From positions 10,664,001-10,728,000 of the forward strand of contig NC_043026.1 in assembly GCF_006345805.1 (NCBI RefSeq): DNA of 64,000 nt, written 5' to 3'. Every line of letters starts with the position of its first letter. Position 1 is the stretch's first letter. The notes beneath the pieces were generated by a model. It was not told where the DNA came from and did no database searches. It was given only the letters and a program-made list of their open reading frames with translations. Below are positions 3,251 through 41,999 of this stretch, piece after piece. The position numbers and the translations under genes are program-made. The stretch is from Octopus sinensis. Taxonomy: Eukaryota.

Positions 3251-5173
3251 CTATGCTCTCTCCCCTGTATGAATACGTTTGTGTATAATTAGTTTACCAC
3301 TTTCATTGAATGATTTGCCACAGATATCACAGTGATAAGGCTTCTCGCCTGTATGAATACGTTTATGTACAATTAAGTGACTACTGTTAGAGAATGATTT
3401 ACCACAGATATCACAATGATATGGTCGCTCTCCTGTATGAACACGTTTGTGTGTAGTTAAACTGCCATTTTCAGTGAATGATTTGCCACAGATTTCACAG
3501 TGAAATGGCTTTTCACCTGTGTGAATACGCTTATGTTTAGTTAAAGTATTACTCTTATTGAAGGATTTACCACAGATATCACAATGATATGGTCTCTCAC
3601 CTGTATGAATACGTCTGTGTACAGTTAAAGAACTGCTGATAGTGAATGATTTGTCACAGATATCACACTGATATGGCCTCTCTCCTGAATGAAGACGTTT
3701 GTGTGAAGTTAAAGCACTCTTGACAGTGAATGATTTGTCACAGATATCACACTGATATGGTTTCTCTCCTGTATGAATACGTCTGTGTTTCATTAAAGCA
3801 CTATTTTCAAAGAATGATTTACCACAGATATCACAATGATATCGCTTCTCTCCTGTATGAATATGTTTGTGTGCAGTTAAGGTACTATTGTAAGAGAATG
3901 ATTTACCACAAATATCACAATGATATGGTCTCTCTCCTGAATGAACACGTTTATGATAAGTCAAAGCACTATTTTGAGAGAATGATTTACCACAGATATC
4001 ACAATGGTATGGCTTCTCTCCTGTATGAATACGTCTGTGTTTGGTTAAAGCACTATTTTCAGAGAATGATTTACCACAGACATCACAATCATATGGTTTC
4101 TCTCCGGTATGACTATGTTTGTGTGCAGTTAAGTTACTATTGTAAGAGAATGATTTACCACAGATATCACAATGATATGGGCTCTCTCCAGAATGAAGAC
4201 GTTTGTGATAAGTCAAAGCGCTACCAATAGTAAATGATTTACCACAGATATCACAATGATATGGTCTCTCTCCTGTATGAATACGTTTATGATAAGTTAA
4301 AGAACTACCAACAATGAATGATTTACCACAGATATCACAATGATATGGTCTCTCTCCTGTATGAATGCGTTTGTGTGTAGTTATCTCACTACTGTTAGTG
4401 AATAGTTTACCACAAATATCACAATGATATGGTTTCTCCCCTGTATGAATACGTATGTGTGTGGTTAAGTGACTATTTCGAGAGAATGATTTACCACAAA
4501 TATCACAATGATATGGCTTCTCCCCTGTATGAATACGTTTGTGTGTAGTTACCTTATCACTCTTCGAGAATGATTTGCCACAAATGTCACATTGATATGG
4601 TCTTTCTCCAGTATGAATACGTTTATGTGTACTTAAGTGACTACTGTAAGAGAATGATTTACCACAGATAGCACAGTGATATGGTCTTTCTCCTGTGTGA
4701 GTATATTTGTGAGAAATTAAGTTACTACTGCGAGAGAATGATTTACCACAGATATCACAATGATGTGGTCTCTCCCCTGTATGAACACGTTTGTGCAAAA
4801 TTAAATAACTATTTCGAGAGAATGATTTACCACAGACATCACAATTATATGGCTTCTCTTCTGAATGAATATGTTTATGTAAAGTTAATTTTTGAAATTC
4901 GACGAATGATTTACCACAGATGTCACACTGATATGATTTTTCTCCTGTATGAATATGTTTGTGTTCATTTAAGTGGCTATTTCGAGAGAATGATTTACCA
5001 CAGATATCACACTGATATGGTTTCTCTCCTGTATGAATACGTTTGTGTCTAGTTAAGTTGCCATTTTGAGAGAATGATTTACCACAGACATCACAGTCAT
5101 ATGACAACTTTTGTTTCTCTTTTATCTTGTCTTCATGGGAAATCAATTCTTTAAGCTTCTTACTCTTTTCCAT
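3251..5173 (-). CDS. C2H2 zinc-finger protein ZNF-A, 640 aa, 22 tandem fingers
   Basis: 24-aa leader plus 22 x 28-aa CxxC-x12-HxxxH units with TGE(K/R)PY linkers; single coding exon. Confidence 0.95.
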
Positions 5174-7636: not shown

Positions 7637-9242
7637 CATGGCCAGAAATAGCAGCCAAATCTCGCACAAACCATAAACATCTCTCATCCACAACTAGAAA
7701 TAGCAGCCAAATCTCGCACAAACCATAAACATCTCTCATCCACAACTAGAAATAGCAACCAAATCTCGCACAAACCATAAACATATCTCATCCACAACTA
7801 GAAATAGCAGCCAAATCTCACACAAACCATAAACATCTCTCATCCACAACTAGAAATAGCAGCCAAATCTCGCACAAACCATAAACATCTCTCATCCACA
7901 ACTAGAAATAGCAGCCAAATCTCGCACAAACCATTAACATCTCTCATCCACAACTAGAAATAGCAGTCAAATCTCGCACAAACCATAAACATCTCTCATC
8001 CACAACTAGAAATAGCAGCCAAATCTCGCGCAAACCATAAACATCTCTCATCCACAACTAGAAATAGCAGCCAAATCTCGCGCAAACCATAAACATCTCT
8101 CATCCACAACTAGAAATAGCAGCCAAATCTCGCACAAACCATAAACATCTCTCATCCACAACTAGAAATAGCAGCCAAATCTCGCACAAACCATAAACAT
8201 CTCTCATCCACAACTAGAAATAGCAGTCAAATCTCGCACAAACCATAAACATCTCTCATCCACAACTAGAAATAGCAGCCAAATCTCGCACAAACCATAA
8301 ACATCTCTCATCCACAACTAGAAATAGCAGCCAAATCTCGCACAAACCATAAACATCTCTCATCCACAACTAGAAATAGCAGCCAAATCTCGCACAAACC
8401 ATAAACATCTCTCATCCACAACTAGAAATAGCAGCCAAATCTCGCACAAACCATAAACATCTCTCATCCACAACTAGAAATAGCAGCCAAATCTCGCACA
8501 AACCATAAACATCTCTCATCCACAACTAGAAATAGCAGCCAAATCTCGCACAAACCATAAACATCTCTCATCCACAACTAGAAATAGCAGCCAAATCTCG
8601 CACAAACAATAAACATCTCTCATCCACAACTAGAAATAGCAGCCAAATCTCGCACAAACCATAAACATCTCTCATCCACAACTAGAAATAGCAGCCAAAT
8701 CTCACACAAACAATAAACATCTCTCATCCACAACTAGAAATAGCAGTCAAATCTCGCACAAACCATTAACATCTCTCATCCACAACTAGAAATAGCAGCC
8801 AAATCTCGCACAAACCATAAACATCTCTCATCCACAACTAGAAATAGCAGCCAAATCTCACACAAACAATAAACATCTCTCATCCACAACTAGAAATAGC
8901 AGTCAAATCTCGCACAAACCATAAACATCTCTCATCCACAACTAGAAATAGCAGCCAAATCTCGCACAAACCATTAACTTCTCTCATCCACAACTAGAAA
9001 TAGCAGCCAAATCTCGCACAAACCATTAACTTCTCTCATCCACAACTAGAAATAGCAGCCAAATCTTGCACAAACCATAAACATCTCTCATCCACAACTA
9101 GAAATAGCAGCCAAATCTCGCACAAACCATAAACATCTCACATCCACAACTAGAAATAGCAGCCAAATCTCGCACAAACCATTAACATCTCTCATCCACA
9201 ACTAGAAATAACAGCCAAATCTCACATAGACATCTCTCATCC
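7637..9242. repeat. Tandem array of a 52-bp monomer, ~31 copies (intron 1 of ZNF-A)
   Basis: Consensus CCACAACTAGAAATAGCAGCCAAATCTCGCACAAACCATAAACATCTCTCAT; no unique spacers. Confidence 0.97.
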
Positions 9243-9441: not shown

Positions 9442-9595
9442 GAAAATGTTCTTTATAAAGCAGAGTTGTTAGAAGCGTGAGTGTGGTGGTCGAGAAATAT
9501 ATTACAAATGTGCTTTATAAGTAATATAAATGTGTTGAACGGAGATGAAGAGAATTTCCAGCAACGACGGAAACGGAAGTAGGATAGTACATAAT
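9442..9595 (-). promoter_or_regulatory. Putative non-coding exon 1 and promoter of ZNF-A
   Basis: GTAAGT donor at 9441; ETS-like ACGGAAGT at ~9573-9580; collinear similarity to 26107-26240 and 33334-33460. Confidence 0.6.
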
Positions 9596-9605
9596 GGAAG
9601 CACTC

Positions 9606-9947
9606 CGTCGGTTACGACGACGAGGGTTCCGGTTGATCCGAATCAACGGAACAGCCTGCTCGTGAAATTAACGTGTAAGTGGCTGAGCACTCCACAGACA
9701 CGTGTACCCTTAACGTAGTTCTCGGGGATATTCAGCGTGACACAGAGAGTGACAAGGCCGGCCCTTTGAAATACAGGTACAACAGAAACAGGAAGTAAGA
9801 GTGAGAGAGAGTTGTGGTGAAAGAGTACAGCAGGGATCACCACCATCCCCTGCCGGAGCCTCGTGGAGCTTTAGGTGTTTTCGCTCAATAAACACTCACA
9901 ACGCCCGGTCTGGGAATCGAAACCGCGAATCCGCTGCCCTAACCACA
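9606..9947 (-). mobile_element. SINE family D (5'-rearranged copy)
   Basis: 3' ~180 bp is the reverse complement of 55930-56100; remnant of a tRNA-like head at the right end. Confidence 0.8.
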
Positions 9948-10123: not shown

Positions 10124-10898
10124 AAGGCGGCGAGCTGGCAGAAACGTTAGTATGCCGGGCGAAATGCTTAGCAGTGTTTCGTCTGCCGTTACGTTGTGAG
10201 TTCAAATTCTGCCGAGGTCGACTTTGCCTTTCATCCTTTCGGGGTCGATAAATTAAGTACTAGTTACGCACTGGGGTCGATATAATCGACTTAATACCTA
10301 TGTCTGTCCTCTCTATTTTTAGCCCCTTGTGGGTAGTAAAGAAATAGGTATTTCGTCTGCCGTTATGGTATGAGTTCAAATTCCGCCGAGGTCGACTTTG
10401 CCTTTCATTCTTTCGGTGTCGATAAATTAAGTACCAGTTACGCACTGGGGTCGATATAACCGACTTAATACCTATGTCTGTCCTTGTTTGTCCTCTCTAT
10501 TTTTAGCCCCTTGTGGGTAGTAAAGAAATAGGTATTTCGTCTGCCGTTATGGTATGAGTTCAAATTCCGCCGAGGTCGACTTTGCCTTTCATTCTTTCGG
10601 TGTCGATAAATTAAGTACCAGTTACGCACTGGGGTCGATATAACCGACTTAATACCTATGTCTGTCCTTGTTTGTCCTCTCTATGTTTAGCCCCTTGTGG
10701 GCAGTAAAGAAATAGGTATTTCGTCTGCCGTTACGGTATGAGTTCAAATTCCGCCGAGGTCGACTTTGCCTTTCATTCTTTCGGGGTCGATAAATTAAGT
10801 GCCAGTTACGCACTGGGGTCGATATAATCGACTTAATACTTATGTCTGTCCTTGTTTGTCCCCTCTATGTTTAGCCCCTTGTGGGTAATAAAGAAATA
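10124..10898 (+). mobile_element. SINE family B tetramer (head-bearing unit plus three 184-bp headless units) nested in an older antisense SINE
   Basis: Units start at 10347, 10531 and 10715; 10-bp direct repeat GGTACTTTAG at 10114-10123 and 10899-10908. Confidence 0.9.
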
Positions 10899-11086
10899 GG
10901 TACTTTAGTTGATCGACCCCGAAAGGATGAAAGGCAAAATAGACACCGGCGAAACTTGAACTCAGAACGTAGCGATGGACAAACTGTCGCTAAAAAAAAC
11001 AAGTGTGTGTGTAGTTGCGAGGGATTTGCGTGTGAACAAGACTAATGAAATAGAAAAAAGAAAAAAAAAAGAGATCAACAATATCA

Positions 11087-14988: not shown

Positions 14989-16110
14989 TTAACCACAAAT
15001 ATCACAGTGATATGGAGTCTCTCCTGTATGAATACGTCTGTGCATAATGAAGTTACCACTATAACAGAATGATTTACCACAGACATCACAGTGATAAGGC
15101 TTCTCTCCTGAATGAGTACGTTTGTGTGTAGATAATGTACTAATGTCACTGAATGATTTACCACAGATATCACAGTGATATGGTTTCTCTCCTGTATGAA
15201 TACGCTTGTGTGTAGTTAAAGCACTACTAACAGTGAATGATTTATCACAGATATCACAATGGAATGGCTTCTCTCCTGTATGAATACGTTTGTGTGCAGT
15301 TATGCCACTACTCTGAGAGAATGATTTACCACAGATATCACAATGATATGGTTTCTTTCCTGTATGAATGTGTATGTGTGAAGTTAAATGACTACTGTAA
15401 GAGAATGATTTACCACAGATATCACAATGATATGGCTTCTCTCCTGTATGAATACGTCTGTGTTTTGTTAAAGTACTATTTCGAGAGAATGATTTATCAC
15501 AGACATCACAATGATATGGTTTCTCTCCTGTATGAATACGTTTGTGTTCTGTTAGGTCAGTGTTTCCAGAGAATGATGAACCACAGACATCACAATGATA
15601 TGGTTTCTCTCCTGTATGAACACGTTTGTGCATAATGAAGTTAATACTCCTATCACGGAATGATTTACCACAGACATCAAAGTGATATGGTTTCTCTCCT
15701 GTATGAATACGTCTGTGTTTGGTTAAAGCACTACCAACAGTGAATGATTTATCACAGATATCACAATGGAATGGCTTCTCTCCTGTATGAATACGTTTGT
15801 GTGCAGTTATGCCACTACTCTGAGAGAATGATTTACCACAGATATCACAATTATAGGGTTTCTCCCCTGTATGAATGCGTATGTGTGAAGTTAAGGCACT
15901 ACTTTGAGAGAATGATTTACCACAGATATCACAATGGTATGGTCTCTCTCCTTTATGAATATGTTTGTGTTTGGTTAAGTGACTTTTCTTAGTGAATGAT
16001 TTACCACAGACATCACAATCATATGACAACTTTTGTCTCTCTTTTATCATGTCTTCATGAGAAATCAGTTCTTTAAGCTTCTTACTCATTTCCATTATTA
16101 TTGTTTTCAA
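14989..16110 (-). CDS. C2H2 zinc-finger protein ZNF-B, 373 aa, 12 fingers (one degenerate), truncated; possible pseudogene
   Basis: Ends ..YHCDICG* where paralogous fingers read CGK (AAA>TAA); one finger has Cys>Phe and an extra codon. Confidence 0.85.
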
Positions 16111-20308: not shown

Positions 20309-21757
20309 TTAGAAGGCATCACTTTGATATGGAATCTCTCTTGCATGAATATGTTTGTGTTTAGTTAGGTTACTATTTTGAGAGAATGATTTGCCACAGA
20401 TGTCACAGTGATATGGCTTCTCTCCTGAATGAAGACGCACATGTCTAGTTAAATGACTACGATCAGAGAATGAATTACCACAGACATTGCAACAATATGG
20501 CTTCTCTCCAGTATGAATACGTTTATGTCTAGTTAAGCTATCACTTTTAGTGAAGGATTTACCACAGATATCACAGTCATATAGTGTCTCTCCAGAATGA
20601 AGACGTTTGTGTGCAGTTATCTCACTACTCTTAGAGAATGATTTACCACAGATATCACAATGATATATCTTCTCTCTTGCATGAATATATTTGTGTGCAG
20701 TTAAGTTACTACTGTCAGAAAATGATTTACTACAGATATCGCACTGATATGGTCTCTCTCCTGAATGAATACGTTTGTGTCTAGTTAAAGTACTTCCTAC
20801 AGTGAATGATTTACCACAGATATCACAATGATATGGCTTCTCTCCTGTATGAATACGTGTGTGTAAATATAAGTGACTATAGCCAGAGAATGATTTACCA
20901 CAGATAGCACAATGATATGGTTTCTCTCCTGAATGAAGACGTTTGTGTTGAGTTAAAGCACAACCAACAGTGAATGATTTGTCACAGATATCACACTGAT
21001 ATGGCTTCTCTCCTGTATGAAGACGTCTGTGTTTAGTTAAAGTACTACTAACAGTGAATGATTTACCACAGATATCACAATGATATGGTCTTTCTCCTGT
21101 ATGAATACGTATGTGTGAAGTTAAGCTACTACTGTCAGAGACTGATTTACCACAGATATCACAATGGTATGGTTTCTCTCCTGTATGTATACGTTTGTGA
21201 GCAGTAAAGCTAGTACTGTCAGAGAGCGATTTACTACATATATCACAATGATATGGTCTTTCTCCTGAATGAAGACGTTTGTGCTGAGTTAAAGCACTAC
21301 CATCAATGAATGATTTGTCACAGATATCACAATGATATGGCTTTTCTCCTGTATGAATACGTATATGTGTAGTTAAGTGGCCACTCTTAGAGAATGATTT
21401 GTCACAAATATCACAATGATATGGTCTCTCTCCTGTATGAACACGTTTGTGCACAACTAAGTGACTGTTTCGAGAGAATGATTTACCACAGATATCACAA
21501 TGAAATGGTTTTTCTCCTGTATGAATACGTCTGTGTTCTGTTAAGTGACTATTGTGAGTGAATAATTTACCACAGACATCACATTCACATGACAATTTTC
21601 GTCTCTTTTTTATCATGTCTTCATGGGAAATCAATTCTTTAAGCTTCTCATTCTTTTCCATTATTAATGTTCCCAAATCACAACGTATAAATACTTTGCT
21701 TTTTTTGTCCTTATCATTTAATCTTATGAATACTTCCACTGCTGTATTTCTGTCCAA
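20309..21757 (-). CDS. C2H2 zinc-finger protein ZNF-C, 482 aa, 15 fingers
   Basis: 56-aa leader + 15 x 28 aa + YQSDAF*. Confidence 0.95.
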
Positions 21758-22990: not shown

Positions 22991-23367
22991 AAAGATCCAA
23001 AAATTATTTACTCTGTGTAAAAAAAATTATTTACTTTGTTTAACCCCCCCCCCCCCATTTTATTTGATATATATTCAGCTTTTACATACATCCATGTTTT
23101 GTGCATGCGCGCATCTATTAATTTGCATACGCGCACACGCGCTTGGTAGTCGTTGTAGGACGACGTCACGACGAGCTAGCGCGGATCGGGACCCCCTCTA
23201 CTTGAATAGTATCCAATAAAGTATTGGTTTCTGAATATTTCAGTGGTTGGAGTGCGTTTGAGATTATTTCTCAAACAAACAAACTAACGGGGCGACGATG
23301 GAGTGTAGAAAGTAGCTTCTATAGCTATAAATTGCAGCCAAATCACGTAGAAATCAGACATTTCTCT

Positions 23368-26027
23368 TCCATAGCTAGAAATAGCAGCCAAATCTTGCAC
23401 AAATCATGGACATCTTTCATCCATAGCTAGAAATGACAGCCAAATCTTGCACAAATCATAGACATCTTTCATCCATAGCTAGAAATGACAGCCAAATCTT
23501 GCACAAATCATAGACATCTTTCATCCATAGCTAGAAATGGCAGCCAAATCTTGCACAAATCATAGACATCTTTCATCCATAGCTAGAAATGACAGCCAAA
23601 TCTTGCACAAATCATAGACATTTTTCATCCATAGCTAGAAATAGCAGCCAAATCTTGCACAAATCATAGACATCTTTCATCCATAGCTAGAAATGACAGC
23701 CAAATCTTGCACAAATCATAGATATTTTTCATCCATAGCTAGAAATGACAGCCAAATCTTGCACAAATCATAGACATCTTTTATCCATAGCTAGAAATGA
23801 CAGCCAAATCTTGCACAAATCATGGACATCATTCATCCATAGTTAGAAATGACAGCCAAATCTTGCACAAATCATAGACATCTTTCATCCATAGCTAGAA
23901 ATGACAGCCTAAATCCTGCACAAATCATGGACATCTTTCATCCATAGCTAGAAATGACAGCCAAATCTTGCACAAATCATAGACATCTTTCATCCATAGC
24001 TAGAAATGACAGCCAAATCTTGCACAAATCATAGACATCTTTCATTCATAGCTAGAAATGACAGCCAAATCTTGAACAAATCATAGACATCTTTCATCCA
24101 TAGCTAGAAATGACAGCCAAATCTTGCACAAATCATGGACATCATTCATCCATAGTTAGAAATGACAGCCAAATCTTGCAGAAATCATAGACATCTTTCA
24201 TCCATAGCTAGAAATGACAGCCTAAATCCTGCACAAATCATGGACATCTTTCATCCATAGCTAGAAATGACAGCCAAATCTTGCACAAATCATGGACATC
24301 ATTCATCCATAGTTAGAAATGACAGCCAAATCTTGCACAAATCATAGACATCTTTCATCCATAGCTAGAAATGACAGCCTAAATCCTGCACAAATCATGG
24401 ACATCTTTCATCCATAGCTAGAAATGACAGCCAAATCTTGCACAAATCATGGACATCATTCATCCATAGTTAGAAATGACAGCCAAATCTTGCACAAATC
24501 ATAGACATCTTTCATCCATAGCTAGAAATGACAGCCAAATCTTGCACAAATCATAGACATCTTTCATCCATAGCTAGAAATGACAGCCTAAATCCTGCAC
24601 AAATCATGGACATCTTTCATCCATAGCTAGAAATGACAGCCAAATCTTGCACAAATCATGGACATCATTCATCCATAGTTAGAAATGACAGCCAAATCTT
24701 GCACAAATCATAGACATCTTTCATCCATAGCTAGAAATGACAGCCTAAATCCTGCACAAATCATGGACATCTTTCATCCATAGCTAGAAATGACAGCCAA
24801 ATCTTGCACAAATCATGGACATCATTCATCCATAGTTAGAAATGACAGCCAAATCTTGCACAAATCATACACATCTTTCATCCATAGCTAGAAATGACAG
24901 CCTAAATCCTGCACAAATCATGGACATCTTTCATCCATAGCTAGAAATGACAGCCAAATCTTGCACAAATCATAGATATCTTTCATCCATAGCTAGAAAT
25001 GACAGCCAAATCTTGCACAAATCATAGACATCTTTCATCCATAGCTAGAAATGACAGCCAAATCTTGCACAAATCATGGACATCATTCATCCATAGTTAG
25101 AAATGACAGCCAAATCTTGCACAAATCATAGACATCTTTCATCCATAGCTAGAAATGACAGCCAAATCTTGCACAAATCATAGACATCTTTCATCCATAG
25201 CTAGAAATGACAGCCAAATCTTGCACAAATCATAGATATCTTTCATCCATAGCTAGAAATGACAGCCAAATCTTGCACAAATCAGACATTTTTCATCCAT
25301 AGCTAGAAATGACAGCCAAATCTTGCACAAATCATAGACATCTTTCATCCATAGCTAGAAATGACAGCCAAATCTTGCACAAATCATGGACATCTTTCAT
25401 CCATAGCTAGAAATGACAGCCAAATCTTGCACAAATCATAGACATCTTTCATCCATAGCTAGAAATGACAGCCAAATCTTGCACAAATCATAGACATCTT
25501 TCATCCATAGCTAGAAATGACAGCCAAATCTTGCACAAATCATAGACATCTTTCATCCATAGCTAGAAATGACAGCCAAATCTTGCACAAATCATAGACA
25601 TCTTTCATCCATAGCTAGAAATGACAGCCAAATCTTGCACAAATCATAGACATCTTTCATCCATAGCTAGAAATGACAGCCAAATCTTGCACAAATCATA
25701 GACATCTTTCATCCATAGCTAGAAATGACAGCCAAATCTTGCACAAATCATAGACATCTTTCATCCATAGCTAGAAATGACAGCCAAATCTTGCACAAAT
25801 CATAGACATCTTTCATCCATAGCTAGAAATGACAGCCAAATCTTGCACAAATCATAGACATCTTTCATCCATAGCTAGAAATGACAGCCAAATCTTGCAC
25901 AAATCATAGACATTTTTCATCCATAGCTAGAAATGACAGCCAAATCTTGCACAAATCATAGACATCTTTCATCCATAGCTAGAAACGACAGCCTAAATCC
26001 TGCACAAATCATGGTCATCTCTCATTC
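23368..26027. repeat. Tandem array of a 52-bp monomer, ~51 copies (intron 1 of ZNF-C)
   Basis: Consensus CCATAGCTAGAAATGACAGCCAAATCTTGCACAAATCATAGACATCTTTCAT. Confidence 0.97.
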
Positions 26028-26819: not shown

Positions 26820-26909
26820 GAATAATATATAGTCTATTGACTAATTTTTCTACACGCTAGGCTACAGGTAGTAAAAATTTCTAAAATCTATATTACCCTG
26901 ATATTATTA

Positions 26910-27475
26910 TTATTATTGAGTGAGAGAGCAGTGCATGCGATCAAAGTGACACTGGGGTAAAATATACGAAGCTCGGTATACCCATCATGACTACCCGTCT
27001 GATAAGGGTACACCAGGCACATACATCATAACCACATGTGCGCGACATAGTGATCTCATATCAAGATAAACAGTGCATGACCTTACAGGTGGGGGCCCAG
27101 TTAGAATTTCCTTCTGGTCGAGTAGCCCATCCCGCTCAAAAGGTCCCTGAATAAGGATTATTTAGGGATGTTGAACAAACCACCCATGTTTCCAAAGGTG
27201 AATTATCCAAACCTCCAAGAATTCCTTTCAACACATGACTATGATGCTCCCCCACTACTTCTGCTCGTGATCAGAGATGCACATATCGTCTGCCACTAAG
27301 GGACATGCTCAACTGGTTAAAGTCAAACAACTAACAAGCAAATCTGTGGTATTGAGCAGAATATTTGCTGTAGCCCATCTTTTATACCAAGACAAAACAA
27401 TGTACATTATAACACTCCCAATCAGTTAAAATCTGAAGCCACGAGAGCCACTGCTTGGTACTGCATCAGGGCATT
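26910..27475 (-). repeat. Unclassified interspersed repeat bounded by (TAA)n
   Basis: GC-richer block with ATT-repeat ends, resembling a common octopus repeat from memory; single copy here, so unverified. Confidence 0.4.
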
Positions 27476-29512: not shown

Positions 29513-31039
29513 TCACAGTGAAATGGTCTCTCTCATATGAATATGTTTGTGTCTAGTTAAAGAACAACTTACAGTGAAGGATTTACCACAAATATCACAA
29601 TGATATGGTGTCTCTCCTGTATGAATACGTTTGTGTATAGTTAAGTTACCATTTTGAGAGAATGATTTACCACAGATATCACAATAATATGGTTTCTCTC
29701 CTGAATGAAGACGTTTGTGTGTAGTTAAAGCACTATTTTCCATGAATGACTTACCACAAGTACCACAATGATATGGCTTCTCTCCTGTATGAATACGTTT
29801 GTGTTTAGTTAACTGATGCCTTTTATGGAATGATTTACCACAGATATCACAGTGATATGGCCTCTCACCTGTATGAATACGTTTGTGTGTAGTTAAGTAA
29901 TATCTTTTAGGGAATGATTTACCACAGATATCACAGTGATACGGCATCTCTGCTGAGTGAATAAGTTTGTGTGTAGTGAAGTTGCTACTGTCAGAGAATG
30001 ATTTACCACAGACATCACAATGATATGGTTTCTCTCCTGAATGAAGACGTTTGTGTGTAGTCAAAGCACTACTTTCACTGAATAATCTACCACAAGTATC
30101 ACAAGGATATGGCTTCTCTCCTGTATGAATACGTTTGTGTGGAGTTAAGTTACTACTCTTAGAGAATGACTTACCACAGATATCACAATGATATGGCTTC
30201 ACTCCTGTATGAGTACGCTTGTGTTCAGTTAATCTACTACTTACAGTGAACGCTTTACCACAGATATCACAGTGATATGGTTTCTCACCTGAATGCAGAC
30301 GTTTGTGTGCTGTTAAAGAACTACTTTCAGTAAATGACTTGCTACAGATATCACAGTGGTATGGCTTCTCCCCTGTGTGAATACGTTTATGTGCAGCTAA
30401 AGTACTGCTTACAGTGTATGATTTACCACAAACATCACAATAGAATGGCTTCTCTCCTGAATGAACACATTTGTGCTTAGTTAAGTGACTACTTTGAGAG
30501 AATGATTTATTACAGTTATCACAGTGATGGGGTGTCTTTCCCATATGAATATATTTGTGTCTACTTAAGGTACTACTTTGAGAGAATGATTTATCACAGA
30601 TATCACAGTGATGTGGCTTTTCTCCAGTATGCGTAAGTCTGTGTGAAGTTAATTTACAACTTTGAGAGAACGATTTACCACAGATATCGCAGATATATGG
30701 CTTCTCCCCTGTATGAGTACGTTTGTGAGTATTCAGGTTACTTTTTTGAGAGAAGGACTTATTACAGATGTCACAACAATATGGCATCTCTCCTGTATGA
30801 ATACGTTTATGTCTAGTTCTGTCAATACTGCGAGTGAAAGACTTACCACAGATATCACAGTGATATAGCGTTTCTCTTGTATGAATATGTTTGTGTTCAG
30901 TTAGGTTACTTTTTTGAGAGAAAGACTTTTTACAGACATCACAATTATATGACAAATTTTCTCTCTCTGTCATATTTCCATGGGGATGGGAAATCAATTC
31001 TTTAAGCTTTTCACTCTTTTCCATGATATTTCTTCTCAA
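29513..31039 (-). CDS. C2H2 zinc-finger protein ZNF-D, 508 aa, 17 fingers
   Basis: 30-aa leader + 17 x 28 aa; ends through a 2-nt slip in a GA run (GAGACCATTTCACTGTGA). Confidence 0.95.
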
Positions 31040-32003: not shown

Positions 32004-32436
32004 GGCATAGTTTCGGTTGTAGTAGCACAGATTTCCGTCGATTTCCGTAAAAAACTTTTATTTTTTTACATAAGTAATGAGAGCGAAAGAGACTAAGAGG
32101 AAGCGATTTTACGACGATAAGGTTTCACTTTGAAATCGGCCTGTGTGCGTTTGATGGGGTGTGGGAGACAGACAGTATGTTGTGTAAGTGAAGTGCTTCT
32201 GTTAGTGTGTGTGAAGAGACAGAGAGAGTAATGTGTGAAAGAGAGAGATAACTGATTTTTTTACTCGGTGTATGTGTATATGTATGTATGCATGTATGTG
32301 TGTGTGTGTGTGTATGTATCTATGTATGTGTGTGTGTTTATGTATGTATGTATGTATGTATGGCCGATTCATCGTAATTTTTTACTCGGTGTATGTGAAT
32401 ATGTATGTCTGCATGTATGTGTGTGTGTGTAAGTAC

Positions 32437-32468
<32 letters not shown>

Positions 32469-33302
32469 ATGTATGGCCGATTCAGTGTTTACATTATTTC
32501 GAATTAAAACGAAAGATTACCTTGCGGCGCCTGTTTATGTAACAGTCTGCTATGTAGAAAATAATGAGGTTGACTCAATGGAATAATGACAGTGATCGAA
32601 GATATAGGCAAAAAGTTTTTTATTTAATCGTTATACATGCCTTGTCGACTGCTACTGTGCAGCCTTAATGTCTCTGTTGATGTGACGATGGTGAAATGGT
32701 AAGAAAAAGACGGGAGAGTTATAAAATGAGGAGGAGATATTCTTCTCATGAGAAAAGAGTTGCATTCAAAGGAAAAAAAAAGTTAATAGTCTATAGAGGT
32801 GCACAGAAACTGGGTGCAAGCATGCATATATATGCATGTGTAAACATTGTGTTGTGCAGCAAAAGGAACGAACAGTACAAAATGTGTAAGGAAAAGTGAC
32901 AAAATCCGATTGGTAATGTTCTGTGTGAAAAGTCTATGCCGGCCATACATACATACATACATACATAAACACACACACATACATAGATACATACACACAC
33001 ACACACACATACATGCATACATACATATACACATACACCGAGTAAAAAAATCAGTTATCTCTCTCTTTCACACATTACTCTCTCTGTCTCTTCACACACA
33101 CTAACAGAAGCACTTCACTTACACAACATACTGTCTGTCTCCCACACCCCATCAAACGCACACAGGCCGATTTCAAAGTGAAACCTTCTCGTCGTAAAAT
33201 CGCTTCCTCTTAGTCTCTTTCGCTCTCATTACTTATGTAAAAAAATAAAAGTTTTTTACGGAAATCGACGGAAATCTGATCTACGACATACGAAACTTCG
33301 CC
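32004..33302. mobile_element. Non-autonomous long-TIR DNA transposon (Merlin-like), ~360-bp arms, 8-bp TSD
   Basis: AGATTAAG|GGC..GCC|AGATTAAG (31996-32003, 33303-33310); arms 32028-32366 and 32939-33278 are nearly identical. Confidence 0.85.
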
Positions 33303-33781: not shown

Positions 33782-33842
33782 TATCGCTCCACCACCGTAC
33801 ATATCTCTATGAGATATTTAGAAATTTAATATTTCTGATATG

Positions 33843-34221
33843 GGCAATCTTTCGTCTCTAGTAGACCTTTCCGTCGATTTCCGTAAAAAAAATTTTTTTT
33901 TTACATATGGGCTTGCGGGAACTGTTGAAGTAATGAGAGCGAAAGAGACTAAGAGAAAGCGATTGTATGACGAGGGAAGTTCTTTTGAAGTTACCGTGCA
34001 TGGGAAGCATTGATGTACATGTGTGTGTGTTTGATGGGGTGTGGGAGACAGACAGTATGTTGTGTAAGTGAAGTGCTTCTGTTAGTGTGTGTGAAGAGAC
34101 AGAGAGAGTAATGTGTCTCTTTCGCTCTCATTACTTCAAAAGTTCCCACAAGCCCATATGTAAAAAAAAAAAATTTTTTATGGAAATCGACGGAAAGGTC
34201 TACTGGAGACGAAAGATCGCC
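33843..34221. mobile_element. Second, shorter Merlin-like element of the 32004-33302 family, 8-bp TSD
   Basis: CTGATATG|GGC..GCC|CTGATATG (33835-33842, 34222-34229); shares TTCCGTCGATTTCCGTAAAAA and GATGGGGTGTGGGAGACAGAC blocks. Confidence 0.85.
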
Positions 34222-34442
34222 CTGATATGTATTTATGCGTTCTGGGTAACTGGCTTGTTCCTTCATAGCGTATCTGACAGTTTTAAAGAGCAGATAAGAA
34301 AAAAAGTACCCACACTTAGAGGTATAATGTAACAACGTATATATACTTGCGCAACTATGAACACGCACATTTACATACAGACAACACAAATAAAAGGGCT
34401 CATATATAACTACACCTACGTAAACGAATATATATATATAGG

Positions 34443-34650
34443 TATACTCTTTTACTTGTTTCAGTCATTTGACTGCGGCCATGCTGGAGCACCGCCTTTA
34501 GTCGAGCAAATCGACCCCGGGACTTATTCTTTGTAAGCCCAGTACTTATTCTATCGGTCTCTTTTGCCGAACCGTTAAGTGACGGGGACGTAAACACACC
34601 AGCAGTTGTCAAGCGATGCTAGAGGGACAAACACAGACAAACATATACAC
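34443..34650 (-). mobile_element. 3' half of a family A SINE, broken at its internal microsatellite
   Basis: Consensus match stops at ACATATACACACAC, directly abutting the FAH exon. Confidence 0.85.
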
Positions 34651-34654
34651 ACAC

Positions 34655-34787
34655 TGCCGCCTCATGGACATTGAACTCGAAATGGCTTTCTTTGTGGGAG
34701 GTCCCTCCAACAACCTCGGCACCAATATCCCCATGGCGAAGGCGGAGGAGCATATCTTTGGAATGGTGGTCATGAATGATTGGAGCG
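34655..34787 (+). pseudogene. FAH: Isolated fumarylacetoacetase exon fragment (44 codons + GTAAGT donor)
   Basis: [44 protein letters not shown] vs human [43 protein letters not shown]; phase-1 donor at the position of human intron 8. Functional status unknown. Confidence 0.85.
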
Positions 34788-35035
34788 GTAAGTAGAAGAA
34801 AGGGGTCTTCAGGGTGCTGCCGTATATTGATGGTTGTATCCTGTGGGGTTCTTCTTTGCTTTTTTTCGGGGTTATTTAAAAAAAATTTTTTTTTTTTTTT
34901 TTTTTTTGATTTTTGTTGGAATTTAAAATTGGAGGAATTTGGGCAAAAAAAGAGTTTTTGATGTATCCAGACGAAGTAAGGAAATATCTTTGCATTTGTG
35001 TGTGGTTCCTGAAGCTATTGACTTACACCTTAGCA

Positions 35036-35506
35036 TACTCTTTACTCCTTTACTTGTTTCAGTCATTTGACTGCGGCCATGCTGGAGCACCACCTTTAGT
35101 CGAGCAAATCAACTCCAGGGACTTATTCTTTTGTAAGCCCAGTACTTATTCTATCGGTCTGTTTTGCCGAACCGCTAAGTGACGGGGACCTAAACACACC
35201 AGCATCGGTTGTCAAGCAATGCTAGGGGGGGACAAAACACAGACACACAAACACATACACACACACTTATATATATATACATATATACGACAGGCTTCTT
35301 TCAGTTTCCGTCTACGAAATCCACTCACAAGGCATTGGTCGGGCCGAGGCTATAGCAGAAGACACTTGGCCAAGGTGCCACGCAGTGGGACTGAACCCGG
35401 AACCATGTGGTTGGTTAGCAAGCTACTTACCACACAGCCACTCCTGCGCCTGTGAGATTTTGTTTATGATGTATGTGTATTATACATATTTGCATTATAT
35501 ATGTAT

Positions 35507-35551
<45 letters not shown>

Positions 35552-35950
35552 ATATATATATATATATATATATGGCCGTTCGCCAGCCTCGTCTGGCACC
35601 TGTGTCGGTGGCACATAAAATCACCCACTACACACTCTCGGAGTGGTTGGCGTTAGGAAGGGCATCCAGCTGTAGAAACACTGCCAGATCTGACTGGCCT
35701 GGTGCAGCCTCCTGGCTTCCCAGACCCCAGTTGAACCGTCCAACCCATGCTAGCATGGAAAGCGGACGTTAAATGATGATGATATATACGACAGGCTTCT
35801 TTCAGTTTCCATCTACCAAATCCACTCACAAGGCTTTGGTTGGCCCGAGGCTATAGCAGAAGACACTTGCCCAAGGTGCTATGTAGTGGGACTGAACCCG
35901 GAACCATGTGGTTGGTTAGCAAGCTACTTACCACACAGCCACTCCTGCGC
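35036..35950. mobile_element. SINE cluster: family A full (35036-35450, -), family C (35575-35783, +), family A 5' half (35784-35950, -), with (TA)n between
   Basis: Consensus matches. Confidence 0.85.
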
Positions 35951-36915: not shown

Positions 36916-37170
36916 CATCATCATCATCATCATCGTTTAACGTCCGTTTTCCATGCTAGCATGGGTTGGACGGTTCAACAGGGGTCTGGGAAGCCAGAAG
37001 GCTGCACCAGGCCAGTCAGATCTGGCAGTGTTTCTACAGCTGGATGCCCTTCCTAACGCCAACCACTCCGAGAGTGTAGTGGGTGATTTTTACGTGCCAT
37101 CTGCACAGGTGCCAGATGAGGCTGGCAAACGGCCACGATCGGATGGTGCTTTTACATGCCACCGGCACAG
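36916..37170 (-). mobile_element. SINE family C
   Basis: (CAT)n tail and GGATGCCCTTCCTAACGCCAACC core. Confidence 0.85.
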
Positions 37171-38134: not shown

Positions 38135-39800
38135 CTAAATATTTTCAGTTTTTCTTTCCACATCAGAGTACCAACCAAAGCAGTGAAGCGCGGAAGCTAA
38201 CGCAGTATCTGTTCCAGAAGTTAGTTCCAGAAGCTGCTTAGTGAATTTTTTTACTGGTCCCCCAAAGAATTCTTTGTCTTGAGAATAACTTTCTTGTAAA
38301 GCAAGAAAAGCCTTGTTTAGCTCATTGATTATTGGGTCACTTCCATCCTCAGCACTTGGTTTTGATGTGCAACCATTTGAAATCTCCATATCCTTCCAGT
38401 CAGCTCCGTCATTTTCATTTATGTGATTGTTTGACTCCATGCAGTTGTCGTCACTGTCAGCACAATGAGGTTCAGTTTTTATATTGTCTATGGACTCCAT
38501 CGTTATACTGTTTGTATCCACTTGATCTGGTTCATTCTGGCAGTTCAGGGGCAGAAACCATTGTTTTGGAACATTCGAACAACCTGTGGCCACTTCGTAC
38601 AACAACTCCCTCATTGAGGGATCATTTATAGGAATGAAGTTCCAGCAGGACAGGATGTTCAGCTTCTTGAAAACCAGGTACTGATGCTTGCATGGTCCAC
38701 CAGTTATTCCTTTCCTGCACTGGCACACACCAAGAGCAATATCCACCATGTAGGTTGTCGGATCATCTGTCTCACTTGGAACCATGAACAAGTTCTTACT
38801 GTTGGCAATCCCAACAATTTCGTTTGGATCAATTTTAGATCCAGCCATGATATCAGGAAAAAATCGAGACTGAAGCAACCTGTCTAGTCTGTTGTTGCAG
38901 ACGTCAATGAGCCGCCTTTCATAATATGTCTCCACTCTTGTGACAATGAAATCGACCAGCTGGATCAAATTATAGGCCCTGGTCCTTTCAAGGATCTGAT
39001 CCTTCATTATCCGCATGGCTGTCTCTGCGTAGTTGTTTGTGTTGTTACCAACATGCAGACCAACTCGATAACACACTGCCCACGATGTCTTTTTGGCACA
39101 GATGTCCTCCAAGTGCTTTCGTACACACTCGTACCTCTTCAATGTTTCATCATTCATGATTTCACCATGTTTTGCCTTCAGCGCCTCGATGGTGTCACAG
39201 TAAATCATGTCCTTCAACAAGGAAAACAAATGTGGCCTGTCTTCCTGCCTAACTGCATTCTTAGCTTCCAAGAGGAAGCGCCAAAATGCCTGAAGAATGT
39301 GAAACACACAATGAAGAAGTGTGGCATCAGAGTAGACAGCATGGAGTGATTGCCTTTCCGATGTACTGTCATCTGTCATGAAGATTTCGGGCCCAGATTT
39401 CCAGCCTCGCCCAAAATATGCACCATTATCCAACAGAGAATTATACAACTTCAGAGCCTCTGTAATTGTTTCTGTGCTCTCACTTGTTGTAATCAGCACT
39501 CCAAGTGGGAGTCCTCCAGCACAACTGTGTGTCAAGAGCAAAAAAACTCGACACCCTTGCCTGTTCATGTTTCCAGATGCATCAATGAATACTAGTTCAC
39601 CAGAATGTTTGATCAGTTTATGCACACGTCTCATCAGTGGCGTTACAATGGCAATGGCAGCTTGTTTTCCCTCTGGCCCAACAAGTGACAATTTGATGTC
39701 ATCACCGAATGATCCTTCCTCGATCTTCCTCTTCAGATCCTTGAGGATAAACTCTCCCTTGGCTTCACCATACTCTTTCTTGAATGTCTGGTAGTATAAC
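38135..39800 (-). CDS. MULE/Mutator DDE transposase, exon 5 (catalytic core + SWIM finger)
   Basis: TTCAG acceptor at 39801; VFIDASGN (D1), FMTDDS (D2), HCVFH (CxxH), NNYAE (E), CQC..PCKH (SWIM). The ORF track's start at 39691 is an internal TTG. Confidence 0.9.
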
Positions 39801-40934: not shown

Positions 40935-41999
40935 AATGCTTGATCTTCATCATCATCATCATCATCATCGTTTAACGTCCGTTCTCCATGCTAGCATGGG
41001 TTGGACGGTTCAACCGGGGATCTGGGAAGCCAGAAGGCTGCACCAGGCTCCAGTCTTATCTGGCAATGTTTGTACAGCTGGATGCCCTTCCTAACGCCAA
41101 CCACTCCGTGAGTGTAGTGGGTGCTTTTTACATGCCACCTGCACAGGTGCCAGGCGAGTCTGGCAACGGCCACGGTCGGATTGGTGTATTTTATGTGCCA
41201 CCGGCACGGAAGCCAGTCGAGGCGGCGCTGGCATCGGCCACGAGTCGGATAGTGCTTTTTACGTACCACCAGACCAGGGATCCTGGCTGGTTCAATTCGA
41301 TTTCGATTTCGCTTGCCCCAATATGTCTTCGCAAGCAAATCTTGAATAATATATATTTCTTTATTACCCACAAGGGGCTAAACACAGAGGGGACAAACAA
41401 GGACAGACAAACTGATTAAGTCGATTACATCGACCCCCAGTGCGTAACTGGTACTTAATTTATCGACCCCGAAAGGATGAAAGGCAAAGTCGACCTTGGC
41501 GGAATTTGAACTCAGAACGTAACGGCAGACGAAATACGGCTACGCATTTCGCCCGGTGTGCTAACATTTCTGCCAGCTCACCACCTTTTCTTGAATAATA
41601 TAATTGTACGGATCAGAATGGAAATCGATCAATGGAAATTGCAGATGTGTTACCAGTGCCGGTGGCATGTAAAAGAACCTTCCGTTTCGCGACCGTTGCC
41701 AGCACCGCCCGTTTCGTGTCCGTTGCCAGCCTCGCCTGGCCCTTGTGCCGGTGGCACATAAAAAGCACCATCCGTTCGTGGCCGTTTGCCAGCTCTGTCT
41801 GGCACCTGTGCGGGTGGCACGTAAAAAGCACCCACTACACTCACGGAGTGGTTGGCGTTAGGAAGGGCATCCAGCCGTAGAAACACTGCCAGATTTGACT
41901 GGGCCTGATGAAGCCTTCTGGCTTCACAGACCCCAGTAGAACCGTCCAACCCATGCTAGCATGGAAAACGGACGCTAAACGACGATGATGATGATGATG
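40935..41999. mobile_element. Three SINEs in MULE intron 3: family C (40935-41339, -), family B (41354-41588, -), family C (41650-41999, +)
   Basis: Family B copy is flanked by the 14-bp repeat TCTTGAATAATATA. Confidence 0.9.

What the first reader, a model, noticed from the sequence alone, without database searches (positions are those of the whole stretch)
34655..34800. Orphan fumarylacetoacetase (FAH) exon fused to a broken SINE
Seen: 44 uninterrupted codons highly similar to the FAH active-site region (ELE..NDWS) followed by GTAAGT; missed by the ORF track. The 5' side runs straight into the CA-microsatellite of a half SINE with no good acceptor; the only nearby AG is SINE-derived (CACAG|ACAAAC.., in frame). 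No other FAH exon was recognised in the window. Established: human FAH intron 8 falls at the same phase-1 position. Having intron sequence excludes a processed pseudogene. Options: DNA-level exon capture, an exon of a very large host gene that nests the ZNF cluster antisense, or an assembly chimera or contaminant.
Basis: partly seen in the sequence, partly recalled or inferred. Interest (0 to 1): 0.7.

Follow-up and report, generated by a model that had tools for sequence, protein, structure and literature searches.

The report
Stray copied piece of octopus FAH gene
This is a roughly 0.9-kb copied piece of the octopus fumarylacetoacetase (FAH) gene (most of one exon plus the start of the next intron) sitting next to a broken short interspersed repeat (SINE) in a zinc-finger gene cluster; it is an ordinary dead gene fragment, not a working exon.

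Summary
Window 34655-34787 encodes 44 FAH codons followed by GTAAGT, and it is the only FAH-like sequence in the 64 kb.

An X-padded protein search found the intact FAH gene of Octopus vulgaris and O. sinensis. It is a compact gene of 24-27 kb, next to a carboxyltransferase gene. I mapped 13 coding exons on the O. vulgaris locus, and no zinc-finger genes are called in either fetched locus.

Window 34655 to about 35546 is a single-copy DNA-level copy of native exon 7 (minus its acceptor and first 23 nt) plus about 0.76 kb of intron 7. The copy includes the SINE that already sat in that intron. It differs from the two native genes by about 3-4% and carries 11 private substitutions.

The 5' end of the copy abuts the CA-rich internal repeat of a SINE that has lost its tail. 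The 3' end lies in a (TA)n tract. A lone matching SINE tail lies 1.1 kb downstream.

Best reading: a non-processed pseudogene fragment, probably copied into a break in a SINE's internal microsatellite by repair synthesis. The giant-host-gene and contaminant options are rejected, and a mis-assembly is unlikely.

This is ordinary biology and of low interest.

The parts
34445..34654 (+). Head half of a SINE-like repeat (SINE-A, 34445-34626) plus its internal CA-rich stretch (34627-34654). The tail half is missing at this point.
   Evidence: blastn to a full copy covers repeat positions 14-200 only. Most other copies in the window are full length. It is 92-95% identical to many copies and not specially close to the neighbouring copy.
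34655..34787 (+). Copy of the 3' 133 nt of FAH exon 7 (octopus numbering; equals human exons 7+8 fused). It holds 44 codons plus 1 base. The acceptor and first 23 nt of the exon are absent.
   Evidence: 131/133 nt identical to L005 26408-26540. 100% amino-acid identity to the O. vulgaris FAH protein P0291. The native exon starts at ttccag|GCAAACCCCCTGTTTTCGGCCCT.
34788..35040 (+). Copy of the first ~250 nt of FAH intron 7, starting with the GTAAGT donor.
   Evidence: Collinear alignment to L005 26541-26790 and to L006. Single copy in the window and in L005.
35041..35451 (+). Full SINE-A copy that was already resident in the parent intron and was copied along with it.
   Evidence: Same position and same flanks as the SINE in native intron 7 of O. 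vulgaris (L005 26791-27391) and O. sinensis (L006).
35452..35573 (+). Unique intron segment (35452-35509) followed by a (TA)n tract (35510-35573). Homology to the parent ends inside the tract, so this is the 3' breakpoint.
   Evidence: 57/59 nt identical to L005 27393-27452. The native loci continue with CATGAGGGGTTGG, which is absent from the window.
35574..35781 (+). Separate SINE-like repeat (SINE-B) ending in (ATG)n, inserted in the TA tract.
   Evidence: 15 further matches (7 of them full length) in the window and L005, most followed by (ATG)n and none by the SINE-A tail.
35782..35950 (+). Lone SINE-A tail half in the same orientation. Probably the missing tail of the head at 34445-34654 (inference).
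   Evidence: blastn to repeat positions 202-370 only. 92-95% identical to other tails. No target-site duplication could be seen.

Best explanation
The feature is a non-processed (DNA-copied) pseudogene fragment of the octopus FAH gene.

About 0.9 kb of the native gene was copied into a zinc-finger gene cluster. The copied piece runs from the Cys codon inside exon 7, through the GTAAGT donor, and about 0.76 kb into intron 7, including the SINE already sitting in that intron. The copy lacks the exon's acceptor, its first 23 nt and the gene's other 12 coding exons, so it cannot make fumarylacetoacetase. It is most likely inert.

Inferred mechanism:
1. A DNA break occurred in the internal (CA)n(TA)n microsatellite of a resident SINE.
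2. The (TA)n end paired with the (TA)n tract in FAH intron 7.
3. Repair synthesis copied leftwards as far as the middle of exon 7.
4. The new strand was joined to the (CA)n end with little or no homology.
5. A second SINE family later inserted into the TA tract.

Shown directly: the homology, its limits, the truncation and the intact parent genes. Inferred: the split-SINE reading and the repair mechanism.
For: Parent gene:
- P0291, FAH of O. vulgaris, is 100% identical over the 44 codons.
- Its gene (L005, OX597841.1:13,702,961-13,727,281) has 13 coding exons within 24.3 kb and lies next to a carboxyltransferase gene.
- O. sinensis has the same arrangement (L006; 27.4-kb gene span and the same neighbour).

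Homology:
- Window 34655-35451 aligns to L005 26408-27196, and 35268-35546 to L005 27210-27488. This is the best match between the window and L005.
- The unique parts are single copy in both sequences.
- The alignment starts exactly at the Cys codon. The native ttccag acceptor and 23 nt of exon are replaced by the SINE's CA stretch.

Divergence:
- Exon 131/133 nt. SINE and unique intron parts about 95-97%; the first 250 nt of intron 91.6%, partly from misalignment at an A/T run.
- Private changes outside low-complexity sequence are 11 (window), 22 (O. vulgaris) and 12 (O. sinensis) in about 780 sites.

Other:
- No other FAH exon is in the window.
- A SINE lacking its 3' half cannot arise by retroposition, and the missing tail lies 1.1 kb downstream in the same orientation, after the FAH piece and a stand-alone SINE-B.
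Against: - I could not show that the window comes from the same genome as L005 or L006. Exact look-ups of its ZNF ORFs and of the exon ORF found nothing.
- The window copy is about equally distant from both native genes. The source could therefore be either species or a third close relative, and the copy's age relative to the species split is open.
- No target-site duplication links the SINE head to the lone tail.
- Sequence similarity does not pair the head with the lone tail. The tail could be an unrelated 5'-truncated insertion, with the head's own tail lost by deletion.
- Only one of the 133 exon bases is private to the copy, and that change is synonymous. Decay is not demonstrated; the copy is simply young.
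- No expression data were available.
Confidence: 0.85

Rival explanations
1. It is the ordinary exon of the native FAH gene, which in this species would be a giant gene with introns of more than 23 kb and 34 kb that nest the zinc-finger cluster antisense.
For: - The reading frame is open, the donor is intact and the intron phase is conserved.
- The amino-acid sequence is identical to O. vulgaris FAH.
Against: - Native FAH in O. vulgaris and O. sinensis spans only 24-27 kb. In O. vulgaris the flanking exons lie 1.8 kb upstream and 1.5 kb downstream of exon 7.
- The window lacks the flanking exons, the acceptor and 23 nt of exon 7.
- Homology to the native locus stops at 34655 and at about 35546.
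Confidence: 0.02
2. It is an assembly chimera: reads from the FAH locus were wrongly joined into the zinc-finger cluster through shared SINE or microsatellite sequence.
For: Both ends of the piece lie in repeats, (CA)n of a SINE and (TA)n, where assemblers do err.
Against: - The piece has 11 private substitutions relative to both native loci.
- It has private indels relative to both: a longer T run, a GTGTGT insertion and a 10-bp deletion at the SINE start.
- It would need two mis-joins 0.9 kb apart.
- If the window comes from a third species, the private changes lose force.
Confidence: 0.04
3. A mobile element captured and moved the fragment. Candidates are Pack-MULE or Helitron-type transduplication, or reverse-transcriptase template switching between a SINE RNA and unspliced FAH pre-mRNA.
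For: - A MULE/ZSWIM-like ORF lies 3.3 kb away at 38135-39691 on the minus strand.
- The layout (SINE head 5', gene piece 3') resembles known chimeric retrocopies.
Against: - The inverted repeats listed across the region that bracket the fragment are ordinary SINE copies in opposite orientation.
- The MULE hits fall below the Pfam cut-offs.
- The piece does not end in a poly(A) tail (it ends in the (TA)n tract), and no target-site duplication was seen.
- The piece ends in a (TA)n tract that is shared with the parent locus.
Confidence: 0.07
4. The fragment has been recruited as an exon of a plus-strand transcript, using a SINE-derived AG acceptor and its own strong donor.
For: - The GTAAGT donor is intact.
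- An in-frame AG lies at 34635-34636, and a phase-1-compatible AG at 34621-34622.
- The open frame is kept, with only one private and synonymous change.
Against: - No plus-strand coding partner is recognisable nearby.
- The copy is young enough that an open 44-codon frame is expected by chance.
- No expression data are available.
Confidence: 0.04

Closest known systems
Non-processed (duplicated) pseudogene fragments
   Same: - It is a DNA-level copy that keeps intron sequence.
- An intact parent gene lies elsewhere.
- The copy is incomplete and cannot encode the protein.
   Different: It is very short: part of one exon plus part of one intron. Both breakpoints lie in microsatellites rather than in a large segmental duplication.
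Templated insertions (filler DNA) at repaired double-strand breaks: synthesis-dependent strand annealing on an ectopic template, finished by end joining
   Same: - A sub-kilobase stretch is copied from a distant locus.
- One junction lies in shared repeat sequence, (TA)n.
- The other junction has little or no homology.
   Different: The mechanism is inferred from the end product only. No empty site or intermediate was seen.
Transposon-mediated gene-fragment capture (Pack-MULEs, Helitrons) and SINE/Alu-mediated rearrangements
   Same: A gene fragment ends up embedded among mobile elements, with a SINE at the junction.
   Different: There are no terminal repeats or element ends around the fragment. 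The SINE looks like the recipient of the insertion, not its carrier.
Fumarylacetoacetase (FAH, EC 3.7.1.2), PF09298 + PF01557
   Same: The 44 codons are identical to the octopus enzyme. They align to chain residues E199, E201 and D233 of mouse FAH, which from memory are the metal ligands.
   Different: Only about 10% of the protein is present. The N-terminal domain and the rest of the C-terminal domain are absent, and the fragment lies outside the gene.

Membership tests
Non-processed (duplicated) pseudogene fragment | Homology to the parent gene extends into intron sequence | tested here: met
   About 0.76 kb of intron 7 is collinear with L005 and L006.
Non-processed (duplicated) pseudogene fragment | An intact parent gene exists at another locus | tested here: met
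   A 441-aa FAH product is annotated on each of two assemblies, O. vulgaris and O. sinensis; I mapped its 13 coding exons on the O. vulgaris locus. Not proven for the window's own genome.
Non-processed (duplicated) pseudogene fragment | The copy cannot encode the protein | tested here: met
   12 of 13 coding exons, the acceptor and 23 nt of exon 7 are absent.
Processed pseudogene / retrocopy | Introns removed, poly(A) tail, target-site duplication | tested here: not met
   The intron is retained. There is no terminal poly(A) and no duplication was seen.
Functional fumarylacetoacetase gene | Complete PF09298 N-terminal and PF01557 C-terminal domains on spliceable exons | tested here: not met
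   Only PF01557 profile positions 49-95 of 214 are present. No other exon is in the 64 kb.
Pack-MULE / transposon transduplication | Captured fragment enclosed by the element's terminal inverted repeats | tested here: not met
   Among the inverted pairs listed, only SINE copies bracket the fragment.
Templated insertion at a repaired break | The pre-insertion site is intact in relatives, and the junctions show homology or microhomology use | tested here: inconclusive
   The 3' junction lies in a shared (TA)n tract. The 5' junction has at most 1 nt of possible microhomology. The empty site could not be fetched.
Exonised repeat / chimeric exon | Transcripts splicing into and out of the segment | not testable with these tools
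   No RNA data were available.

The most novel reading that the evidence does not exclude
The copied FAH fragment is spliced into a plus-strand transcript of the zinc-finger cluster region. It would use its intact GTAAGT donor and an AG supplied by the SINE's CA stretch. That would be a caught-in-the-act case of SINE-assisted exon shuffling in an octopus genome.
Probability: 0.04. Interest if true: 0.5.

Novelty: new member of a known kind. Interest (0 to 1): 0.18.

Why it matters
Mostly it matters as a clean-up. It explains an apparently orphan, well-conserved coding exon as a young dead copy, so it should not be annotated as FAH or as a new gene.

It also gives a tidy single example of how the internal microsatellites of octopus SINEs can act as break and repair sites that pick up pieces of distant genes. 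That would only become interesting if a genome-wide count showed many such cases.

Tried and rejected
**Protein searches**
- The first search with the bare 45-aa peptide returned only short exon-sized ORFs from other animals. That tool appears to return only proteins about 1 to 1.75 times the query length.
- A 129-aa chimeric probe likewise returned only proteins of 130-226 aa.
- Padding the exon with X to 258 aa finally reached the full-length octopus proteins.
- The exhaustive representative search gave at best 82% identity (P0033, on contig L002). Its DNA matches the window only within the exon.

**Look-ups and literature**
- Exact-sequence look-ups of the window's exon ORFs and three ZNF ORFs found nothing, so the window's own assembly position is unknown.
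- Paper searches for the run accession and for FAH in octopus gave nothing useful.

**Ideas tested and dropped**
- Tandem duplication or a circular-DNA origin of "SINE head + exon piece". The upstream head is no closer to the co-copied SINE (92.5%) than to unrelated copies (up to 95%).
- The lone tail belonging to a "SINE-B with the same tail". SINE-B is a stand-alone family ending in (ATG)n.
- Pairing head and tail by target-site duplication or by subfamily similarity. Both were uninformative.
- Pack-MULE capture. No enclosing terminal repeats were found.
- tRNA and Rfam scans of the region found nothing meaningful.
- Two other strong window-L005 matches (26904-27369 and 9593-9928) are multi-copy repeats, not further FAH-locus sequence.

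Full report
**What is at the coordinates**

Window 34655-34786 reads as 44 codons without a stop: [44 protein letters not shown]. One further base (G, 34787) is followed by GTAAGT at 34788-34793. The peptide matches residues 193-235 of mouse fumarylacetoacetase (FAH) in the PDB at E = 4e-16. It also matches Pfam PF01557 above its cut-off. The match covers chain residues E199, E201 and D233; from memory, these are the metal ligands.

Immediately upstream, 34445-34654 is the head half of a roughly 400-bp SINE-like repeat plus its internal CA-rich stretch. This repeat, called SINE-A here, has at least 15 copies in the window, most of them full length. The start-to-stop ORF over the exon is 59 aa, which explains why a 60-aa ORF track missed it.

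**Setting**

The window looks like octopus DNA.
- Four C2H2 zinc-finger ORFs lie on the minus strand: 3251-5173, 14989-16110, 20309-21757 and 29513-31039.
- There are many SINE copies and a MULE/ZSWIM-like ORF at 38135-39691 on the minus strand.
- A (TAA)n satellite runs from 57980 to the window end.

tblastn found no second FAH exon anywhere in the 64 kb.

**What the exon should look like**

In other animals the homologous exon starts eight codons further upstream, with "(x)KPPxFGPC" after a phase-1 acceptor. L002 shows gagcag|CTAAGCCGCCAGTGTTTGGTCCGTGT and L003 shows the same layout. It ends at the same phase-1 donor after NDWS. In the window those eight codons are replaced by the SINE's CA stretch, which reads TNIYTH. 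The exon is therefore truncated at its 5' end. This is why no acceptor could be found.

**Finding the parent gene**

A search with the exon padded by X to 258 aa returned P0291, a 441-aa protein named "fumarylacetoacetase-like [Octopus vulgaris]". It is 100% identical over the 44 codons. O. bimaculoides is 91% identical and Argonauta 77%.

The O. vulgaris gene (L005; GCA_951406725.2, OX597841.1:13,702,961-13,727,281) spans 24.3 kb. All 13 coding exons map onto it. A carboxyltransferase gene is the only other gene called in the fetched locus, and there are no zinc-finger genes. The O. sinensis gene (L006; CM016888.1) has the same neighbour and a 27.4-kb span.

Native exon 7 is ttccag|GCAAACCCCCTGTTTTCGGCCCTTGCCGC...GGAGCG|gtaagt. 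The next exon starts at ccag|CCCGTGAC, 1.5 kb downstream.

**The window piece is a copy of part of that gene**

The best match between the whole window and L005 is window 34655-35451 to L005 26408-27196. It continues as 35268-35546 to L005 27210-27488. The alignment begins exactly at the Cys codon. It then runs through:
- the remaining 133 nt of exon 7;
- the donor and about 250 nt of unique intron;
- a full SINE-A copy that sits at the same place in the native intron of both species;
- 59 nt of unique sequence.

The alignment ends inside a (TA)n tract. The unique parts are single copy in both the window and L005.

Identity to O. vulgaris, by segment:

| Segment | Identity |
|---|---|
| Exon | 131/133 nt, both differences synonymous |
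| Unique intron | about 92-95% |
| SINE head | 95.2% |
| SINE tail | 94.7% |
| Post-SINE unique | 57/59 nt |

In a three-way alignment, private changes outside low-complexity sequence number 11 (window), 22 (O. vulgaris native) and 12 (O. sinensis native) in about 780 sites. The copy is thus about 3% from O. sinensis and 4% from O. vulgaris, roughly as far as the two native genes are from each other. It also has private indels. At two residues (the P of GGPS and the second E of KAEEH), the copy shares the O. vulgaris/O. sinensis state, while O. bimaculoides has the state also seen in Argonauta. So the copy derives from the vulgaris/sinensis lineage.

**What this excludes**

- A processed pseudogene: the intron is retained.
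- A contaminant: the piece contains octopus intron and octopus SINE sequence.
- The native exon of a giant gene: the native gene is compact, and its neighbouring exons and the first 23 nt of this exon are absent here.
- A mis-assembly is unlikely, because of the private substitutions and indels and the need for two mis-joins 0.9 kb apart. I cannot check reads, and I could not place the window in an assembly.

**How it probably got there (inference)**

Four observations bear on the mechanism:
- A SINE lacking its 3' half cannot be made by retroposition, so the head at 34445-34654 was separated from its tail after insertion.
- Downstream of the FAH piece come the (TA)n tract (35510-35573), then a complete copy of a different stand-alone repeat ending in (ATG)n (SINE-B, 35574-35781).
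- After that come TATATAC and a lone SINE-A tail (35782-35950) in the same orientation.
- A full SINE-A reads head-(CA)n-(TA)n-tail.

The simplest reading is that one SINE-A was split in its internal microsatellite, first by the FAH piece and later by SINE-B.

The 3' junction lies in a (TA)n tract shared by donor and recipient. The 5' junction, (CA)n|TGCC, shows at most 1 nt of possible homology. This pattern fits a break in the SINE microsatellite followed by pairing of the TA end with the TA tract of FAH intron 7. Repair synthesis would then run back to mid-exon 7, and the new strand would be end-joined to the CA side.

I give this mechanism about even odds. No target-site duplication links head and tail, and similarity does not pair them. 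A deletion plus an unrelated truncated SINE insertion would look similar.

A tandem-duplication or circular-DNA origin is not supported. Transposon capture is not supported either.

**Function**

With 44 of about 420 codons, no acceptor and no partner exons, the piece cannot make FAH. Its open frame is expected for so young a copy, since it has only one private change in 133 nt. Use as a cryptic exon, through SINE-derived AGs at 34635-34636 or 34621-34622 and the intact donor, cannot be excluded without RNA data, but nothing points to it.

**Verdict**

The feature is a young, non-processed pseudogene fragment of FAH lodged in a SINE within a zinc-finger cluster. It is a known kind of thing, of low interest beyond being a neat example of repeat-associated fragment capture.

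Noticed in passing
window 7644-9223 and 23321-26025: Two arrays of what looks like the same 52-bp tandem repeat family: 30 copies at 97% and 52 copies at 95%. Both show strong negative GC skew and lie between the zinc-finger ORFs.
   Followed up: no
window 57980-64000: A (TAA)n-rich satellite with scattered TGA units fills the last 6 kb of the window, at GC about 4-6%.
   Followed up: no
window 3251-5173, 14989-16110, 20309-21757, 29513-31039 (all minus strand): Four long C2H2 zinc-finger ORFs share an N-terminal '[15 protein letters not shown]' motif, typical of the octopus ZNF expansions. None was found by exact protein look-up.
   Followed up: partly
window 38135-39691 (minus strand): A 518-aa ORF has weak MULE transposase and ZSWIM RNaseH-like matches, about 21 bits against cut-offs near 27. 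It is flanked by inverted SINE-B copies at 36916-37153 and 41761-41999.
   Followed up: partly
window 32004-32366 / 32940-33302 and 33842-33949 / 34115-34222: Two long inverted repeats lie just upstream of the finding: 363-nt arms at 98% and 108-nt arms at 94%. They look like foldback or MITE-like elements.
   Followed up: no
L005 27028-27194: The SINE in native O. vulgaris FAH intron 7 carries an extra tail copy after a TA run. O. sinensis and the window copy lack it, so it is an O. vulgaris-specific change.
   Followed up: partly
window 10177-10902 and 56470-56840: A 184/368-bp tandemly repeated unit occurs at two places in the window.
   Followed up: no
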